DNA of 64,000 nucleotides. Origin: Gracilinanus agilis (Eukaryota). The translations under genes and the position numbers were made by a program. The notes below the pieces were generated by a model, which did no database searches, was not told the DNA's origin, and saw only the letters and a list, made by a program, of their open reading frames with translations. Below, piece after piece: positions 48,518 through 62,374 of this stretch. Location: assembly GCF_016433145.1 (NCBI RefSeq), contig NC_058130.1, positions 201,611,718 through 201,675,717 of the forward strand, given 5' to 3'. Numbering within the stretch: the first letter of the stretch is position 1; the number at the start of each line of letters is the position of its first letter.

Positions 48518-53971
<5,454 letters not shown>

Positions 53972-54513
53972 CTGAGCTTCTCCAAGATGCCTACATTATG
54001 CATGGATAGGCCAGAGGTAAACTCCCAATTCATTTGCACCACACATAACCTCTGTTCACCTTCCTCTACCTCATGCTTTTTTCTGATTACAGGTGCCAAA
54101 GGACTTAAGATGTGATGGCTTCAAGAAGAGAATGGGTTGTTACTCCCTCTTTATACAAGGACAGGCCTCATTGAGAGACCAAAGTCTTGTGTACCTGGTT
54201 CTGTGGAAATGCACGAGCCTATTTGAACTTGGGAAGAAATGTGCAGAGCCAGGAGACAGAATCATCCCAATCTCCCTGCAATCCCTGGCAGGATAGGGAG
54301 ATCTCTGCCTAGAATCTTCTGCAGAATCTTCCTAGAATGTCTTGTTGGTTCATCCCCCAAATCCAACCAGTGCATGTCCCACCACACAGAAAAATCCCAC
54401 GAACAGACTTTTTTTCCTTTAACTACCAGATACATAATACACACTATAGCAGCCAACTTTTTTCTTAAAATTTCCTTTTTTTTTGGAGCAAATTTTCCCT
54501 TTTTTAAAACTTA

Positions 54514-54519
54514 AATAAA
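54514..54519 (+). terminator. Probable PRSS53 polyadenylation signal AATAAA
   Basis: First AATAAA downstream of all candidate PRSS53 stops. Confidence 0.45.
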
Positions 54520-55070
54520 ACCTTACAAAATAGACTTTAGAAAATAAGTTACAAATTGTAGCAAAAGGCTTTTCCCCCAAGGGAGAAATCCTGTTCTCTT
54601 CTCCCTCTTTGGGAATCTATCTCCCTTGAACCTATGCTTTCCCTCTCCCTTCATTCTTAAGACTCCAAGGTTCCTTTGTCCTCTATCTCTTTCTCCATGA
54701 CCCACACAGTAGATCTAGGGTCCTTGATGCTGAGGAAGAGAGGGGAAAAAGAACTCAGTACAACTCTAACCCTTTCCTAAGAACTGGACAACCAGCATCC
54801 TGGGAAATTAGCCCCATACGGCAGAAGACGGGAGCCAGAGAGAAATGGCAAAAGGGCAGAAACATCTTCTCCAGGGCTGGGATTTTCCTTGATCCTGAAT
54901 CTTTCATTGGAAGGGGCAGGAAGAAAGCATCTCTAACAGTTCTATTGTTCTATCCTGCCAACTCTCTTGAGTCCTTTCCAAGAGGATGACAGAAGAGATC
55001 ATATCCAAACTCTCCTGAGTTAAAAAGCAGAAATAAGAACCCCGATGTCCCAGTCTTTGGGAGAAACAAT

Positions 55071-58000
55071 TCAGAGGGAGAAGCCGAGGTCTGGAGGCCA
55101 CTGGAGTGAAGGGTCTAGGACCAGTCATGGGGGTGGATGGAGAGGAGAGGAGAGATCCCGATCTCTTGCTGTAGGTGACTGTGTATCCCCTGAGGGGAAA
55201 AAGAGAGAAAAACATCAGGTCACTAGCTAAGTAGATATATTTGTGGAACTAAACAGAACTTTAAATCCTCAAGTATCCTAAATCTCAGCCTATTGTGAAC
55301 CTAGATGCTTTACTTTCACTTATTTCCTAAGATTCAGATACTATGTCCTAATTTTCTTAAGGTAAAAAAAGGCTCATCTTTCTGTCTCCATCTTTTCTTT
55401 TTTGTCACTTTCCCCTATAAGAATCTCATTTTTCTAAGAAACTATTCTAGTTTGAGGGGTCAGTTTGCAGGGATATAAAAAGGGGATAGGGTTAGAGGTG
55501 GCTTAGTTGCAATGTAGGGAAGAGGATACCTATATTTGACATGGAATGGGCTTAGTCAAAGCAAAAGGAAGTGACATTTTACAGGGTGAGAACTAGATCT
55601 TTTGGGAACAAGTTGAAAGAACTGCCTGACTACCTCAGTTTCCCCTCTGGTATAAGAAGAGAAGGCTCACTTTAGAGTCAGAGTGTATAGGTTCTAGTCC
55701 AGATTCAGTTTTCTTTCTGGCTCATCCTTTAAGTCCTAGTGGGTGGAGGTACTTTATACTTTGATCCCTTTTGATAGAAGATGCAAAATGGGGGCTAATT
55801 ATTGTTATTGCTTTAGCCAGGGCCAGCTTCAAAGAAACAATTAACTGTGACTCACCCCTGGAGCAAGAGGCAAGCTTAGTTTTCGGAGGGAAGGGAAAGG
55901 ATGACTGAGACATAGAAAGAATTGAGACTCTGGGAGAAAAAACAAAGCCATCTGATTGAGGTTTCAAGGGGAAAAGATATCTATATTTTAGGAGAGCTAC
56001 TAGGTCTAAGGAAAAGGAATAAATTAACAAGTTGCCTAAATGGTGGGAACTGAGGGTGCATATGGCAAAACAGCAAAGGGCTGTGAAGAGTTAAAATACT
56101 GCAGAAGAGTGGGAGGCTAGGTTCTCCTAGGTTTCAGGAGGGAAGTTAGGTATAAACGTGAGGAGAGAAACACAAGTGCAATGTATGTGACACATGAACA
56201 ATTAGTAGTAAACTCTTGCTGTCTAAACAATGGGAAATGGATGCCCCTGCATATATTCCTTTACTTGCTGCCTGCTCTTGGAAAGGGAATTTTCCAAAGA
56301 AAAAAGGTACACACATTGATTTGATCTATCTCCTCGCAGAGTAAGATGATTCCAGATTTGGCTAACTGATGGGTTACACAGCTAACTTCCAAAAAGGGAG
56401 GAAATTCCCAACAGCAAAGGAACAGATACGTCAATTCCTGTGTCCTTATTTGGGCCACTCTGATTTGCTTCTTCTTTGAGCTCATGGGGTTCTCTAAAAT
56501 TGCCCTTCATCTCTTTCATAGGTCCTTGTATCTATCCTGTCTCAGGCCTTCCACCAAACTGGACTTTACCATTGTTTTCCAGAACTGAGTTATCTGCCCA
56601 TTATTCTACCAGAACATGACTCTTCCCCTATTCAATTTCTCTGAACCTCCAGAATGCAAGGACTTCATAGGTCCTCTCTTTTTTATGCAAAGGAATCTGA
56701 AACCTTTAACTTATACTCATAATCTAAATGTGCTGCTCCCCTTTAGTTTTTGCTCTCTCCTCCACTTTAGAACTCTGGCTTTCAAAGTTTCATCCCACCT
56801 TGGGTTTGCCTCCTAAGACCCTCCCTTCCACCCATCCACTCGTGTTCTCATACCAGTACTAGTCATCGTCCACTCCTCCTTATGTTGTTGCTGGTGCTGC
56901 AAGAAGCTGATTTGGCGACGAAAGCGGCGAGGGCAATGTGGGCAAGAGAAGGGTCCCTCCCGAGGTGCATGGACCCTCCCATGGCCTTCTAGCCGGGCTG
57001 CTGTCCGAAAAGCTTTGCCACAGACTCCACAGCGATGGCGCTTAGGATCTGTGTGTGTCCTTCCATGATTCTTGAGGGCCAATAGGTTAGGAAGTAGCTT
57101 GGGGCAGAGGGAGCAAGGATAGAGACCTGTGGCATGGGCTTTTTGGTGGTTTAGCAGGCTACCAGCATGACGGTAAGAGCGCCCACATTGGGTACAACAG
57201 AAAGGACGTTCTTCTTCTGTGGCTTGTTTTAACCCCACTTCTTTTGCCTCCTTCACAGCCGTCTCAGACTCTGATATTTCTTTAGTGGCTCTTTGGGTTT
57301 CCCCTTGCCCTGATATACACTTATCTTCCATATCCCTTTTAGTCTCAACCTCTTGTCCATCAGCTTCCTCCACCTGAGGTGGGGCCTGGCCTTGATCCAT
57401 AGCATGGCCTCTCTGGTGGTTAGTCAGCTCACGAGAGGCACGGAAAGCTTTTCCACAGTGAGGGCACATGAAGCGACGGGTTGCTGTGTGAATGCGACCA
57501 TGGTTTTTGGCCGCCATGGGATTTGAAAATTCCTTAGAGCAGAGATGGCAGTGGTAATGGCCTGTTTTGTGGGTATTGCGGTGGTTCAGAAGACTGCCTG
57601 CATGCCGGTAGGTCTTGCCACACTGTCCACAGCAGAAAGGGCGGATTTCTAGCTGGGATTGAGAACTGTTATCTTGGTCCTGGATCTGCCCACTATCCCA
57701 GTCTTCTAGGCTTCTTGGCTCTAGGGCATTTGGTTGACTGTCTTCTTGACTGCATGTATTCCCAAACCCACAGTCACCTGGTCTGGTGTGTTTTTGGCTA
57801 CCTGATATACTCACTGGTGTCTCATTAATATGCCATGCATCTGTTTTCCCATGGATCCAGGACAATGGCTCTCCACTGCCTTCCTGACTTCCTGATAACC
57901 CACTGGAATCCTGACCTAATTCTTGTGTGCCCTTAGTTTGGTTATTGACCTGAGCTCCAAGTTCATATTCACATGATCTTCCGTCTAGTTCACAGATATC

Positions 58001-61000
58001 TACTTGACTCTCATCTTTGACAGTTGTTTGGCTAAGTACTTTAATTACATCTAGTTCCCTCTTACTGGTCTCCTCATGCTCCCTTAGATGTCTCTCCAGA
58101 GATCCCCTTCTAGGCAAACTGTGGCCACAAAGGGCACAACGCACAGCTACCCGAGGTCCACCCCCACGCCTTACCCTTCCTGCCCGTCGCCTCCGACTTT
58201 CTGAATGTAGGCGCTGATGGTTCTTTAGCGCCATGCGGTTTGAATAGGTTTTAGGGCAGGTTGGACAGCTGTACTGCCCTATCTCATGGCTCCGACGATG
58301 GTTCAGGAGGCTTCCTGCATGCCGGTAAGTCCTCCCACACTGACCACAATGGAAAGGTCTTTCATCTCTTATCAGTGAGGGTGATGTTGACAGCAGTTTC
58401 CGAGATCCTCCAGAATTGCCATTTCGCCGTTCCCCATGAACACGCTGATGGTTGGCCAGCTGTTTTCGCAACCGAAAGGCTTTGCCACATTCTCCACAAT
58501 GGAACCGACGAGGTTCAGCATGAATACGCCGGTGGTTCTTGAGAGCCATGAGGTTAGAGAAACCCTTGGAGCAGGCCTGGCAGCCAAAATGTCCTGTCTG
58601 ATGGCTCTGTCGATGGTTGATGAGGCTACCAGCATGCTTATATGTCCGACCACACAATTCACAGCCAAAGGGACGATCCATACTGGCCTCCTCTGAATTC
58701 CCCTCTTCTATGCCATCATCTTTTGGTGGTATGTCTTCCTGCTTCATAGAGGGTTCCTCTGGCTCTTTCTTAATGGCTCTCTCTTCAACTGCCTTCTCTT
58801 TAAGCTCTTTTTGCAATTCTTCTGATGGCATCTGCAGTGGCCCTATCTCTGCTGTCTTCTCTGGTTCCTTGCTTTCTACCACAGGGATGACTCCTAACTG
58901 GGGTTCTGCCCCCTTGCAACGGGGATGATTACGCAAATGATTTCGATAGGCAGCCAAATTGGGATATCTTCGGGCACAGATAGGGCAGGCAAAGTCTCCT
59001 GTCTGGTGAGTCTTACGGTGGTTTACCAGGCTCCCACCATGGCGGTAAGTCTTACCACACTGATTGCATTGAAAGGGACGAGGCTGGGCAGGAGAGAGGG
59101 CTTCAGGAACAGCTTCAACACTGCTGCCTTCTATCCCTAATTCAGAGGTTGTGTCTACAGTGCCTACAGCTTCCATACCATCTTTGGACATAGTGTCCAA
59201 ACATGCCTCAGAAATAGTGCTTGTGCCATCTTGGGAGGTAGAGGTCACAGTGCTCTCAAAATTACCACTCAAAGTTGTCTCAGAGATCCCTTCTTTCTCT
59301 TCCAAGTCTGTAGGAATCGTATCCATTCCATCTACTGAAATGCTCCCTAGACTTTGATGGTGGCGCTCCAGACTTCCTAGGTCATCATATGTCTGGCCAC
59401 AGCAAGCACAGATATGCCCATAGCCAGCCCCATCCAACCCCTCTACCTCCCGCTGTAGTTGGTTTAGTAGTTCTGCTTCTGAGAGCTGCAAGGGAGTAGA
59501 GTTAGAGGCCAATGTCTCTTCCTCTTCATCCTCTGAAGAATCCTGGTTCTCACCAGGGGAATCATGGACCTGACTTCTATGTTGTCTATAATCTGCTCGT
59601 CCAGGAAAGATCATCCCACAGAGACAACAAAGAAAAGGTTGGCCTGATGTAGCCTCTCCTGGCCCATGGTTCTGAAAATGGCTTCGCAGAGCAGGGAGTG
59701 AGTCAAATTCCTTAGGGCAGAGTGAGCACTGGTAGATGCCTGGTGGGTGGCAAGGTCGATGATTTAATAAGCCAGCTGTATGGTGGAAAGATCGCCCACA
59801 ATCATGACATGTGTGGTGGCCAGAGGTCCGCCAACCATTGAGAGCCTCAGGGCCATGGGAAATAGTATCATACACACTCTCTTGTTTATGTACTCCTTCT
59901 ACCAAAGCTGGAGTGTCCCTACTGCCTCCCTTATTGCCTGTTATCAGGTTCCCAAGGAAACAGGACTCTTTCCCTGCCAGTCTTTTTTCATTGATTTTGT
60001 CCTCTTCATTACTCTGGAAACAGTCATTTCTTTCTAGCTTACATTTATCTTTTTCAATATCACTCTGAAAACAGTTCTCATTGTTTTCCAACTTGCCATT
60101 GGCCATATTAATTCCATTCACTTGCACATCTTTGTGAAAGTCAGTTTTCTCTTTTTCTTCCTCTTTCACAATCAAATTCTTTTCTTGGTAGCCCTCTGGG
60201 GAGGATTCATTTCTATTTGTTACTAGGACTTCACTGTCACTTCCACCAGAACTCCCAGCAGTCCGCAGCTGATGCCTCTTGCTCCTTCTCCGGCTATGAC
60301 GTCGCAAGTGGCTCTTCATGGCTGCCACAGTATGGAAATGCTTGGCACATGTTCCACAACCAAAGTCACCTGTCTGATGGGTCTGTCTATGGTTGATGAG
60401 ACTTCCTGAGTGTCGATAACTCTTCCCACAGTCTCTACAGGAATAGGCCCTTGGAGGTGACTCTGATGACTCTCCTCTATTATTCTCCCCTTCTTGATGG
60501 GTTTGGCCATGTTGTTTTAAGCTCTCTACATCATCAAAAAGCATCCCACAAAGACCACATATTTGTGCCACTGCCATATCTACTTCTGGATGGCTATCTA
60601 TCGTCCCTTCTTCACTAGGATCTTCTTCCTCTTGGGCTGTTTGCTGTTCTTCAGGGCACTCCTCCTCATGACTAGGAGTAGAATCCTCCCTTTCTAGGCC
60701 AGGTGTGATACTTTCCCCATCATGGCTTAGTGGTTCCTCTCTCCCTTGACTCCCATTGCGTCGTGCTGCCTTAAAATGCACCCTCACATGATTTCGGAGG
60801 GCCATGAGGTTTGGATACTGTCGAGGGCAAAGGGAGCACTGATATTCACCAGTCTGATGGCTGTGACGGTGGTTTACCAGGCTTCCACGATGACGGTAAG
60901 CCCGCCCACACTCACTGCATTTATAGGGGCGGTGGTCTGTAGTGGTAGTTGGAGTAGCAGGATTCTCTTCTTCCTCTGGATCAACCTCTGGTGGCAGTGC

Positions 61001-62374
61001 CATCAGGGATGGTAGTGGTGTGGGAGGTGGTGGTGGTGGCTGCGGCTGTGGCTGTGGCTGCGGCTGTTGCTCCTCTTCCCCTCCACTACGACGAGCTTTA
61101 AGATGAGCCCGCAAGTGATTTTTAAGGGCTGCAGCATTGAATAGCTGCTTTGGACAGACTGGGCAAGGATAGACACCAGTCTCATGACTCTTCCGGTGAT
61201 TGATAAGGCTTCCAGCATGTCGGTAAGTACGGCCACAATCAGCACAACGGAAAGGCCTATATTCTTCTACTCCGCCCTCATTAAGTTCTCCAGCATCAAG
61301 CTCTCCAGAAGTGCTGAACTCTCCAGAGGCATTAAGTTCCTTGGTACCATGAAGCTGACTTCTATCATGGCCATTGGCAGATGGCTCTCCTTTCTCTTCC
61401 CATGGTAGTTCTTTCCCTTCTCCTTCATGGACTTGTTGATGTCCCAACAATTCACTAGGCAGGCGGAAAGCTCGTGGGCATTGGGGACACTGGTAAGGTC
61501 TATACTGAGCATGTAACCTAGAATGATTCTTTAGGGCCATAAGATTAGAAAATTCCTTGAAGCATACAGCACAAGGGTAGACACCTAGGGCATGGCTCTG
61601 ACGGTGGTTAGTTAGGCTTCCAGCATGCTTATAAGTTTTGCCACATTGTCCACACTTATATCGACGTTCATCCTCAGCAGGGGGGGACTGAGGTGGTCTC
61701 TCATTCCCTGTAAAATCCACCATAGATTCAGCTAAATACTGCTCCAAATTGCTAAGAAGGCTACTGGTTGGAGCAGGAAGAGCAGGGGCCTCTGTGGGAC
61801 CTGATGCATTTCCCCACCCCTCTGTACTCTCCTTAGAATTTGTCCTGTTCTCCCAGCCATCCTTGTGTCCAGGTGGCTTTTCCCAGGTACCAGAGGCCTC
61901 CCTAGGATCAGGTCCAGCCTCCCATACATGTGTATTTTGTCCATGATTTGTCTGGTTGTTCCAGTTTTCCCCAGGACCAGGCATATCCCGCCAAATGTCA
62001 GTGGTAGTCATCTGACCCTGAGTATATGATGTGGCCTCTTTGTGGCGGGGAGGCCGCCGCCTCTTTCGGCCCTCCGGGACATGAGTCCTCAGGTGACTCT
62101 TGAGAGCCATAGGATTAGAGAAGTCCTTGTTGCAGGTGGTACAGGGAAAGAGGCCAATTTCATGGGTCCGTCGATGATTGACCAGACTACCTGCATGACG
62201 GTAACCTCGACCACACTGAACACATCTGTATGGCCGAGGGATCTCATCAGCCTCGTCACCATTCCTGCCTGAAGGTGAGCGATGGAGTAGCTCACGGTGA
62301 CGTGCCAGTTCTGGGAGGCTGGGGAAATGACGCTGACAATCAGGGCAGCTGATCAAGGCAGGGGTATCCTCCAT
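55071..62374 (-). CDS. ZNF646: Zinc finger protein 646 (~1,850-1,880 aa, ~30 C2H2 fingers in clusters)
   Basis: Giant coding exon from the ATG at 62374 (acceptor ~62461) to the donor G|GTATGA at 56854/56853. Terminal exon acceptor at 55189 (in-frame TGA at 55127-55125) or at 55114 (stop at 55073-55071). N-terminus MEDTPALISCPDCQRHFPSLPEL and position next to PRSS53 match ZNF646. Confidence 0.95.
61022..61078 (-). repeat. Coding low-complexity repeat (EEEQQPQPQPQPQPPPPPPTP)
   Basis: (GGCTGY)n and (GGT)n on the plus strand inside the ZNF646 exon. Confidence 0.85.

What the first reader, a model, noticed from the sequence alone, without database searches (positions are those of the whole stretch)
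55071..56854. ZNF646 terminal exon: in-frame TGA cuts off a conserved CtBP-motif-like tail, and a second in-frame acceptor bypasses it
Seen: the phase-1 donor at 56854 spliced to the strong acceptor at 55189 reads GDTQSPTARDRDLSSPLHPPP-TGA(55127-55125)-LVLDPSLQWPPDLGFSL-TGA(55073-55071). Recalled: the human C-terminus is ...PLLDPSPQWPADLSFSL*, and PADLS fits the CtBP-binding PxDLS consensus. The 17 codons after the stop therefore still look like protein under constraint. Also seen: 10 nt after the stop is a second acceptor (CT-rich tract...GGTCCTAG|AC at 55114) that is in phase with the donor (G+AC=Asp) and gives ...TSTDPSLQWPPDLGFSL*. The stop context is UGA-CUG; UGA-C is the leakiest context, although not the exact UGA-CUAG motif. 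Unspliced read-through of the donor gives a fourth tail (GMRTRVDGWKGGS*). Inference: inclusion of a corepressor-docking tail may be switched by acceptor choice or stop read-through. A recent nonsense allele or an assembly error are the alternatives.
Basis: partly seen in the sequence, partly recalled or inferred. Interest (0 to 1): 0.8.

Follow-up and report, generated by a model that had tools for sequence, protein, structure and literature searches.

The report
Relic ZNF646 tail in marsupial 3'UTR
Marsupial ZNF646 lost its conserved 16-residue C-terminal tail before living marsupials diverged, and the old tail codons survive inside a strongly conserved 3' UTR, so the "stop followed by conserved protein" seen in this opossum is most likely a fossil, not a switch.

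Summary
The sequence observation is correct. The window is Gracilinanus agilis ZNF646. The donor at 56854 spliced to the acceptor at 55189 reads ...HPPP-TGA-LVLDPSLQWPPDLGFSL-TGA. About 70 eutherians end ...PLLDPSPQWPADLSFSL.

The TGA is not an assembly error or a recent allele. All 12 annotated marsupial species stop there, and four further runs of the same organism hold the words that span it.

The switch interpretation is mostly not supported:
- In five Australidelphia (koala, Dromiciops, Sarcophilus, Antechinus, Sminthopsis) two extra bases follow the TGA. The tail is then out of frame and read-through gives only LWS*, FWS* or LLA*, yet the tail DNA is as conserved as in opossums.
- Horse DNA points to a 1-nt frameshift in stem marsupials (77 versus 76 nt). 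Didelphids later lost 2 more nt (74 nt), which put the relic back in frame.
- The tail is no more conserved than about a fifth of the 650-nt 3' UTR that follows it.
- The second acceptor at 55114 is in phase in all species. It has a purine-rich proximal tract, no transcript support and no annotated isoform.
- No SECIS element and no stimulatory RNA structure were found.

Some hints remain unexplained. Six of seven tail substitutions fall on third codon positions (p about 0.01). A Monodelphis-like relative reads UGA-CUAG. A koala isoform model reaches the tail through a koala-specific donor.

The parts
56854..62374 (-). ZNF646 main coding exon. It has 1840 full codons plus the first base of the split Gly codon, and the phase-1 donor ACTG|GTATGAG lies at 56854/56853.
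   Evidence: It is 100% identical to Gracilinanus agilis XP_044515546.1 (P0121) over 1840 aa.
55190..56853 (-). Last intron, 1664 nt. Read on unspliced it gives GMRTRVDGWKGGS*. It contains a conserved island at about 55836-55737.
   Evidence: An RNA contig of a Monodelphis-like relative carries the 56854>55189 junction. Conservation profile.
55125..55189 (-). Translated part of the terminal exon, (G)DTQSPTARDRDLSSPLHPPP, plus the TGA at 55127-55125. Its last six or so codons are read in a frame shifted relative to eutherians.
   Evidence: The same stop occurs in 12 marsupial species. Distance from exon start to the tail is 77 nt in horse, 76 nt in Australidelphia and 74 nt in Gracilinanus.
55071..55124 (-). 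Relic of the ancestral C-terminal tail, LVLDPSLQWPPDLGFSL plus the ancestral TGA. It is now 3' UTR. It is in frame with the TGA only in didelphids.
   Evidence: It has 6 variable columns in 54, five of them at codon position 3.
55114..55116 (-). Candidate distal acceptor, with AG at 55116-55115 and the first exon base at 55114. It is in phase with the donor. The AG comes from the marsupial CTA-GAC (Leu-Asp) codons, whereas horse has CTG-GAC and so no AG.
   Evidence: No junction was seen in RNA contigs. No isoform using it is annotated in 12 species.
54420..55070 (-). Strongly conserved 3' UTR. Per 50 nt, 62-100% of columns are identical in five marsupials. It includes the block 54570-54467, which is also conserved in horse.
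   Evidence: RNA contigs of the relative cover 54601-55187.

Best explanation
This is an ancient, fixed truncation of ZNF646 in marsupials. The old tail codons are fossilised in the 3' UTR.

The therian ancestor ended ...LLDPSPQWPADLSFSL*. In the marsupial stem lineage a net 1-nt loss occurred in the proline-rich tract of the last exon. That shifted the frame, so translation now stops at a TGA (...HPPP*) 18 codons early. The stop lies in the last exon, so it should not trigger nonsense-mediated decay (established knowledge, not tested).

The downstream sequence became 3' UTR. It stayed nearly unchanged because the whole first 650 nt or so of this UTR is under strong nucleotide-level constraint in marsupials. 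In the opossum family (Gracilinanus, and Monodelphis by an RNA contig) a later 2-nt deletion just after the TGA happened to put the relic back in frame. That creates the picture of a stop codon followed by a conserved ORF.

Shown here: the stop is shared by all marsupials examined; the frame relations; the level of UTR conservation; and canonical splicing in a relative. Inferred: the order of the two indels, and that the relic is not translated at a functional level.
For: 1. All 12 annotated marsupial species, from five orders, end at ...HPPP* (koala HLPL*).
2. Genomic DNA of koala, Dromiciops, Sarcophilus (two assemblies), Antechinus and Sminthopsis shows TGA followed by 2 extra nt (CT, or TT in koala) before CTGGTCCTAG. 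Read-through there gives LWS*, FWS* or LLA*, while the tail DNA is 0-4 substitutions from Gracilinanus.
3. Distance from exon start to the tail is 77 nt in horse (in frame), 76 nt in Australidelphia (70 nt in Antechinus, after a 6-nt deletion) and 74 nt in Gracilinanus. Horse aligns without gaps to the Australidelphian tail frame: ACC CCA ACG ACC CTA CTC CTG GAC against ACC CCC ATG ACT CTG GTC CTA GAC.
4. Sarcophilus, in both assemblies, has a 1-nt deletion inside the tail, which abolishes ...FSL*.
5. Columns identical in all five species per 50 nt: tail 0.84, next UTR windows 0.82 and 0.84, range 0.62-1.0 down to about 54420, ZnF coding region 0.80-0.92, intron 0.2-0.6. Of 54-nt UTR windows, 22% have as few variable columns as the tail or fewer.
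6. RNA contigs of a Monodelphis-like relative show the canonical junction and an unbroken exon across the TGA and the 55114 AG.
7. There is no SECIS and no stable structure 3' of the UGA (z = +1.4).
8. Gracilinanus has UGA-CUGG, whereas all four nucleotides of CUAG are critical for efficient read-through (PMC4132726).
Against: - Substitutions in the tail among seven marsupials fall at third codon positions in 6 of 7 events (p = 0.007), and 5 of 7 are synonymous (p = 0.026). Only 0.3% of UTR windows show such phasing. This is the signature expected of a translated sequence, though from very few events.
- The tail has fewer variable columns (0.111 per nt) than the UTR mean (0.188 per nt).
- The AG of the distal acceptor is conserved and in phase in all species.
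- The Monodelphis-like relative has the exact UGA-CUAG motif.
- A koala RefSeq isoform model reaches the tail.
- Minor splice forms and ribosome occupancy could not be measured, because only assembled contigs were available.
- The polarity of the 2-nt indel rests on one eutherian outgroup and on an alignment in a C-rich tract.
Confidence: 0.72

Rival explanations
1. Didelphid-specific stop-codon read-through. After the 2-nt deletion restored the frame in opossums, leaky decoding of the UGA (UGA-C context, and UGA-CUAG in Monodelphis) would append the ancestral 17-residue tail to a small fraction of ZNF646, and this product would be functional.
For: The tail is in frame and open to the ancestral stop in Gracilinanus. 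The Monodelphis-like RNA contig has 55122 G>A, which gives UGA-CUA-G and is synonymous in the tail frame. UGA-CUA alone supports about 1.5% read-through, and UGA-CUAG genes show 3.5-31% (PMC4132726).
Against: Gracilinanus has CUGG, so a critical nucleotide is missing. There is no stimulatory structure. The CUAG is derived in one lineage only, since Australidelphia have CTG or CTT. Tail conservation is the same in lineages where read-through cannot reach it, so conservation gives no support. A frame restored by an indel is a 1-in-3 chance event. No ribosome profiling or peptide data exist.
Confidence: 0.09
2. An alternative distal acceptor (AG at 55116-55115) is used in marsupials generally. 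It would splice the phase-1 donor directly to AC-CCT... and produce ...TST-DPSLQWPPDLGFSL*. On this reading peptide-level selection explains the third-position substitution bias.
For: CCTAG|A(C/T) is conserved and in phase in all six genomic loci whatever indels lie upstream. All four substitutions within D...L* are at codon position 3. A pyrimidine-rich tract lies 14-41 nt upstream.
Against: The 10 nt proximal to the AG contain five purines, and +1 is A. Several AGs lie between the strong canonical acceptor and this site, and the only branch-like sequence (AUGAC) is 11 nt away. These points come from the sequence judged against general splice-site knowledge; no scoring model was run. None of the 12 marsupial annotation sets lists such an isoform, although they do list intron retention and a koala alternative donor. 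The RNA contigs of the relative are unspliced across the site. In Sarcophilus the product would run on for about 45 unrelated residues. The AG is simply the ancestral Leu-Asp codon pair, and it is as conserved as the surrounding UTR.
Confidence: 0.07
3. Assembly error or a recent, polymorphic nonsense allele in the sequenced individual.
For: None found.
Against: The TGA is at the homologous position in 12 species and in two independent Sarcophilus assemblies. Four further runs or samples of the same organism hold all sampled 31-mers across 55085-55165.
Confidence: 0.005
4. The conserved UGA encodes selenocysteine.
For: The UGA is conserved across marsupials, and the 3' UTR is conserved.
Against: No SECIS family match was found in 52500-57000 even at E <= 1. 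The downstream frame is not kept in Australidelphia. The homologous eutherian codon is Thr or Pro, not Cys.
Confidence: 0.005

Closest known systems
Lineage-specific C-terminal truncation by frameshift, with the former coding sequence left as 3' UTR
   Same: There is a net non-multiple-of-3 length change relative to the outgroup. The new stop is shared by the whole clade. The former codons are recognisable downstream but no longer frame-locked, as shown by the 2-nt indel and the 1-nt deletion in Sarcophilus.
   Different: The relic is unusually well preserved (12 of 17 residues, 39 of 45 nt against horse) after more than roughly 80 million years (a date from general knowledge). This is apparently because it sits in a UTR under nucleotide-level constraint. 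A secondary deletion has put it back in frame in opossums.
UGA-CUAG programmed read-through genes (OPRL1, OPRK1, AQP4, MAPK10, MDH1; Loughran et al. 2014, PMC4132726)
   Same: A UGA stop followed by C, an in-frame extension homologous to a conserved peptide in this species, and a close relative with the exact UGA-CUAG.
   Different: In the known cases the stop, the CUAG and the extension frame are conserved across vertebrates. Here CUAG is confined to one lineage, Gracilinanus has CUGG, and the extension is out of frame in most marsupials.
Alternative distal 3' splice sites that change a protein's C-terminus
   Same: An in-phase AG downstream of the main acceptor that would bypass the stop.
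   Different: There is no junction evidence and no annotated isoform. The proximal polypyrimidine tract is poor, and the site lies 75 nt downstream of a strong acceptor with intervening AGs.
CtBP-binding PxDLS motifs (PMC5536941: Pro-x-Asp-Leu-Ser, with x commonly hydrophobic)
   Same: Eutherian PADLS has the P..DLS spacing, and ZNF646 is a C2H2 zinc-finger protein like many CtBP partners.
   Different: No CtBP-ZNF646 link was found in the literature search. x is Ala. Several eutherians have PANLN, PADLN or PTDLS, and marsupials have PPDLG. Binding has not been tested.

Membership tests
Programmed stop-codon read-through (UGA-CUAG class) | UGA immediately followed by CUAG | tested here: not met
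   Gracilinanus has UGA-CUGG. The exact motif occurs only in the Monodelphis-like relative. Australidelphia have UGA-CUCU or UGA-UUCU.
Programmed stop-codon read-through (UGA-CUAG class) | Extension ORF kept in frame with the stop across the clade | tested here: not met
   It is in frame in didelphids only. Five Australidelphia are offset by 2 nt and would give LWS*, FWS* or LLA*.
Programmed stop-codon read-through (UGA-CUAG class) | Protein-coding substitution signature in the extension | tested here: inconclusive
   Six of seven events are at codon position 3 (p = 0.007) and five of seven are synonymous (p = 0.026). There are only seven events, plus a frameshift in Sarcophilus, and overall conservation is not above that of the UTR.
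Programmed stop-codon read-through (UGA-CUAG class) | Measured read-through (reporter assay, ribosome profiling or peptides) | not testable with these tools
   No Ribo-seq or proteome data could be reached.
Alternative 3' splice-site isoform | AG in phase that yields an open reading frame | tested here: met
   G+AC gives Asp, then PSLQWPPDLGFSL*, in Gracilinanus and in 5 other loci.
Alternative 3' splice-site isoform | Junction present in transcripts or annotated isoforms | tested here: not met
   RNA contigs of the relative show only the canonical junction and are continuous across the site. The 12 annotation sets list no such isoform. Contigs drop rare forms, so a minor isoform is not excluded.
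Alternative 3' splice-site isoform | Adequate polypyrimidine tract and branch point | tested here: inconclusive
   Positions -5 to -14 are C,T,G,G,T,C,A,G,T,A, of which five are purines. The pyrimidine-rich stretch lies further upstream. No validated splice-site scoring model was available.
Selenoprotein (UGA = Sec) | SECIS element in the 3' UTR | tested here: not met
   Rfam cmscan of 52500-57000 at E <= 1 gave no SECIS family hit.
CtBP-binding PxDLS protein | P-x-D-L-S with hydrophobic x, conserved among orthologues | tested here: inconclusive
   Most eutherians have PADLS, but PANLN, PADLN, PTDLS and PADIS also occur. Marsupials have PPDLG. Motif definition from PMC5536941.
CtBP-binding PxDLS protein | Physical binding to CtBP | not testable with these tools
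   No paper links ZNF646 functionally to CtBP.
Frameshift truncation with relic coding sequence | Length change relative to the outgroup that is not a multiple of 3, and a new stop shared by the clade | tested here: met
   77 nt in horse against 76 nt in Australidelphia. The stop is shared by 12 species.
Frameshift truncation with relic coding sequence | The relic accumulates frame-breaking changes and is no more conserved than its non-coding surroundings | tested here: met
   There is a 2-nt indel after the TGA and a 1-nt deletion in Sarcophilus. Of UTR windows, 22% are at least as conserved.

The most novel reading that the evidence does not exclude
The ancestral tail is still made in marsupials, but by different lineage-specific routes around the same old lesion. 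These would be UGA read-through in opossums (frame restored by a 2-nt deletion, with UGA-CUAG in Monodelphis), a new +10-nt splice donor in koala that shifts the frame back into the tail, and perhaps the distal CTAG acceptor elsewhere. Peptide-level selection would then explain the third-position bias of tail substitutions.
Probability: 0.12. Interest if true: 0.7.

Novelty: new member of a known kind. Interest (0 to 1): 0.3.

Why it matters
As it stands this is a cautionary case. A stop codon followed by a well-conserved homologous ORF looks like read-through or recoding in a single genome. A handful of related genomes show that the frame link is absent in most of the clade and that the conservation belongs to the 3' UTR.

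It also records that all marsupials examined lack the near-invariant eutherian ZNF646 C-terminus, or reach it only by side routes. That bears on what this uncharacterised tail does in eutherians.

If the residual coding-like signal proved real, it would be an unusual example of one peptide being rescued by different recoding or splicing routes in different lineages.

Tried and rejected
- Read laying (one call allowed). The three small runs of the window's own organism gave only one intronic contig. Only contigs of a relative's RNA run were informative, so splice junctions in Gracilinanus itself could not be counted.
- The look-up of encoding contigs. It returned no DNA for Monodelphis, Vombatus, Macrotis, Trichosurus, Petaurus and Notamacropus because the files were too large. 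The DNA comparison therefore rests on six marsupials and one horse.
- Search for partial marsupial ORFs from transcript assemblies, using the last 173 residues of wombat ZNF646. It found only eutherian fragments.
- Exact-pattern scan of metagenome contigs for host DNA. It gave one chance bacterial match.
- Selenocysteine: rejected, no SECIS.
- RNA structure stimulating read-through: rejected, z = +1.4.
- Termination-reinitiation at the overlapping ATGA. The ATG is in the tail frame in Sarcophilus, Antechinus, Sminthopsis and Dromiciops. It was rejected as a general route because koala has GTG there and in didelphids the ATG is out of the tail frame.
- The 30-nt loose end of a relative's contig at 55187 has no match in the window and remains unexplained.
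- No monotreme orthologue appeared among the best 120 hits, so the four tail residues that differ between marsupials and eutherians could not be polarised.
Full report
**Observation.** On the minus strand the window carries a 1840-codon ZNF646 exon (62374-56855). It ends at a phase-1 donor, ACTG|GTATGAG (exon end 56854). After a 1664-nt intron comes a strong acceptor, tttttcccctcag|GG (exon start 55189). The spliced reading is G-DTQSPTARDRDLSSPLHPPP-TGA(55127-55125)-LVLDPSLQWPPDLGFSL-TGA(55073-55071). An AG at 55116-55115 followed by AC is in phase with the donor. Unspliced read-on gives GMRTRVDGWKGGS*.

**Identity.** A search with the C-terminal region of the ORF returned ZNF646 orthologues. 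The cluster look-up showed that the spliced model is identical, tail included, to Gracilinanus agilis XP_044515546.1 (1861 aa). The window is therefore from that opossum. The neighbouring genes are a convergent trypsin-like gene (PRSS53) and VKORC1, as in the loci of the other species.

**Is the recalled eutherian tail right?** Yes. About 70 eutherian ZNF646 proteins end ...PPPPTPTTPLLDPSPQWPADLSFSL, with few variants such as PKWPADLSFSL, PQWPANLNFSL, PQWPADLNFSL and PQWPTDLSFSL. Reptiles end ...GDVS and amphibians ...MVEVT. The Gracilinanus post-stop peptide matches the eutherian consensus at 12 of 17 positions. From the Asp codon to the stop it matches horse DNA at 39 of 45 nt, with the terminal TGA at the same place. 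Homology is not in doubt.

**Is the TGA real?**
- All 12 annotated marsupial species end at ...HPPP* (koala isoform X2 at HLPL*). They are Monodelphis, Gracilinanus, Dromiciops, Sarcophilus, Sminthopsis, Antechinus, Macrotis, Vombatus, Phascolarctos, Notamacropus, Petaurus and Trichosurus.
- Genomic DNA of koala, Dromiciops, Sarcophilus (two assemblies), Antechinus and Sminthopsis shows the TGA at the homologous position.
- Four further runs or samples of the window's own organism hold all sampled 31-mers across 55085-55165.

An assembly error or a recent allele is excluded. The stop predates the radiation of living marsupials.

**The decisive comparison is the frame.** The distance from the exon start to the GAC of the tail is 77 nt in horse, which is in frame. 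It is 76 nt in koala, Dromiciops, Sarcophilus and Sminthopsis, and 70 nt in Antechinus, which has a 6-nt deletion; all five are out of frame. It is 74 nt in Gracilinanus, which is in frame.

After the TGA, Australidelphia read TGA-CT-CTGGTCCTAG (koala TGA-TT-CTGG, Dromiciops TGA-CT-CTTGGCCTAG). Gracilinanus reads TGA-CTGGTCCTAG. Read-through of the TGA in Australidelphia would therefore add only LWS*, FWS* or LLA*. Yet their tail DNA differs from Gracilinanus by 0-4 substitutions.

Whatever keeps the tail sequence unchanged in those five species from three orders, it cannot be read-through translation. This holds whichever indel state is ancestral.

**Probable history.** Horse aligns without gaps to the Australidelphian sequence in the tail frame: ACC CCA ACG ACC CTA CTC CTG GAC against ACC CCC ATG ACT CTG GTC CTA GAC. 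The single missing base lies upstream in the C-rich proline tract. The simplest history is a 1-nt deletion in stem marsupials. The TGA is then the out-of-frame A-TGA-C of ATG-ACT, and the next out-of-frame stop is the TAG of CTA-GAC. A 2-nt deletion in the opossum lineage later restored the frame by chance. This order is an inference from one outgroup and from an alignment in low-complexity sequence.

**Is the tail more conserved than its surroundings?** No.

| Region | Columns identical in all five marsupials, per 50 nt |
|---|---|
| Zinc-finger coding region | 0.80-0.92 |
| Intron | 0.2-0.6 |
| Translated part of the last exon | 0.80 |
| Tail | 0.84 |
| Next two UTR windows | 0.82, 0.84 |
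| Rest of the UTR down to about 54420 | 0.62-1.0 |

With six marsupials the tail has 0.111 variable columns per nt against a UTR mean of 0.188. Of 54-nt UTR windows, 22% are at least as conserved as the tail.

Sarcophilus, in both assemblies, has a 1-nt deletion in TCC-CTC. It replaces ...FSL* by ...FSSELFF... and about 40 more codons. Antechinus and Sminthopsis lack it.

Horse and marsupial UTRs are otherwise hardly alignable, except for a block at 54570-54467 (88.7% over 106 nt). The similarity of the tail across therians is therefore explained by coding constraint on the eutherian side and UTR constraint on the marsupial side.

**Read-through in this species.** The context is UGA-CUG-G. Loughran et al. 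2014 (PMC4132726) found that efficient mammalian read-through needs UGA-CUAG. The C and the three nucleotides after it are all critical, and UGA-CUA alone gives about 1.5%. Gracilinanus lacks the A. The 91 nt from the stop onward fold less stably than shuffled controls (z = +1.4). There is no SECIS in 52500-57000.

One RNA run of a coded relative is of interest. Its V-to-I change at 57025 matches the Monodelphis domestica protein. It has 55122 G>A on the gene strand, which gives UGA-CUA-G and is synonymous in the tail frame. A low level of read-through in Monodelphis is therefore physically plausible. The change is derived in that lineage only, since Australidelphia have CTG or CTT.

**The second acceptor.** CCTAG|A(C/T) is conserved and in phase in all six genomic loci. 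It would give DPSLQWPPDLGFSL* (GLSL in Dromiciops, and a run-on in Sarcophilus). The following points count against its use:
- The AG is simply the Leu-Asp codon pair CTA-GAC of the old coding sequence. Horse has CTG-GAC.
- It is no better conserved than the UTR around it.
- The ten bases before the AG region include five purines, and +1 is A.
- It lies 75 nt downstream of a near-ideal acceptor with several intervening AGs.
- The only branch-like sequence (AUGAC) is 11 nt away.

These splice-site judgements rest on the sequence and on general knowledge of splice sites, not on a scoring model.

The relative's RNA contigs show the canonical junction in a 4289-nt contig and run unbroken across the TGA and the AG. 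None of the 12 annotation sets lists such an isoform, although they do list intron retention (Monodelphis X2...GMRA*) and a koala alternative donor. Assembled contigs drop rare forms, so a minor isoform is not excluded.

**Residual evidence for translation.** Among seven marsupials the tail shows seven substitution events:
- CTG>CTA in the Monodelphis-like relative
- CTG>CTT, GTC>GGC, CTC>CTT and TTC>TTA in Dromiciops
- GAC>GAT in koala
- CTC>CTT in Antechinus

Six are at third codon positions (binomial p = 0.007) and five are synonymous (p = 0.026). Only 0.3% of UTR windows show such phasing in any frame. By contrast the truly translated 21 codons upstream vary at all three positions.

This is what a translated, constrained peptide would look like. 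It rests on seven events, four of them in one lineage, and it sits beside a frameshift in Sarcophilus. I record it as unexplained and do not treat it as decisive.

**Koala.** Isoform X1 (XP_020864088.1 and others, 1881 aa) uses a donor 10 nt downstream of the canonical one. The exon ends at L001:8025 and is followed by GTGAGT. This changes the phase so that the last exon is read in the frame that runs into the tail (...STPVILVLDPSLQWPPDLGFSL*). That GT is absent in Gracilinanus, Dromiciops, Sarcophilus and Antechinus. If the model reflects real transcripts, koala has re-recruited the fossil tail. I could not check this with reads.

**CtBP.** The consensus is Pro-x-Asp-Leu-Ser with x commonly hydrophobic (PMC5536941). 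Eutherian PADLS fits loosely, but elephant has PANLN, several rodents have PADLN and marsupials have PPDLG. No paper links ZNF646 functionally to CtBP, and the ZNF646 literature consists almost wholly of GWAS mentions. The docking idea is an untested lead.

**Verdict.** The best-supported explanation is an ancient frameshift truncation whose downstream relic is preserved by 3' UTR constraint. The in-frame arrangement in this opossum is secondary. Read-through as a conserved mechanism is excluded by the frame data. The distal acceptor has no positive support beyond phase and a small substitution bias. I give the relic reading about 0.7, and about 0.12 in total to any scenario in which the tail is functionally translated in some marsupials.

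Noticed in passing
L001:8015-8031 (koala) and protein P0133: Koala RefSeq isoform X1 uses a koala-specific donor 10 nt downstream of the canonical one (GGAC|GTGAGT). This shifts the phase so that the frame-shifted last exon reads into the ancestral tail (...STPVILVLDPSLQWPPDLGFSL*). The GT is absent in Gracilinanus, Dromiciops, Sarcophilus and Antechinus.
   Followed up: partly
window 54467-54570: A block is about 100% identical among six marsupials and 88.7% identical to horse over 106 nt. It carries AATAAA on the + strand at 54514 (PRSS53 sense). It looks like the overlapping 3' ends of the convergent ZNF646 and PRSS53 genes. No AATAAA or ATTAAA occurs on the ZNF646 strand between 55080 and 54300.
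   Followed up: partly
window 55737-55836 (last intron of ZNF646): This intronic island has 86-88% of columns identical in five marsupials, against 20-60% for the rest of the intron. It contains TAATTAG, an octamer-like ATTTTGCAT, AACAAT and two ATCAAAG-type motifs, which suggests an enhancer. Only its first 30 nt match horse.
   Followed up: partly
window 55134-55187 (relative's RNA run X10, 575-nt contig): A contig joins the exact start of the last exon to 521 nt of unrelated upstream sequence (ending ...AAGATTAACAA) that has no match in the window. It could be an alternative upstream exon in the relative, diverged intron, or a chimeric contig.
   Followed up: partly
L003 and L004 (Sarcophilus), about 47 nt after the TGA: A 1-nt deletion in the TCC-CTC of the relic tail is present in both Tasmanian devil assemblies and absent in Antechinus and Sminthopsis.
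   Followed up: yes
window 54600-55070 and homologous loci: The first 650 nt or so of the ZNF646 3' UTR is as conserved among marsupials as the zinc-finger coding region, yet is largely unalignable with horse. The cause of this marsupial-specific UTR constraint is unknown.
   Followed up: partly
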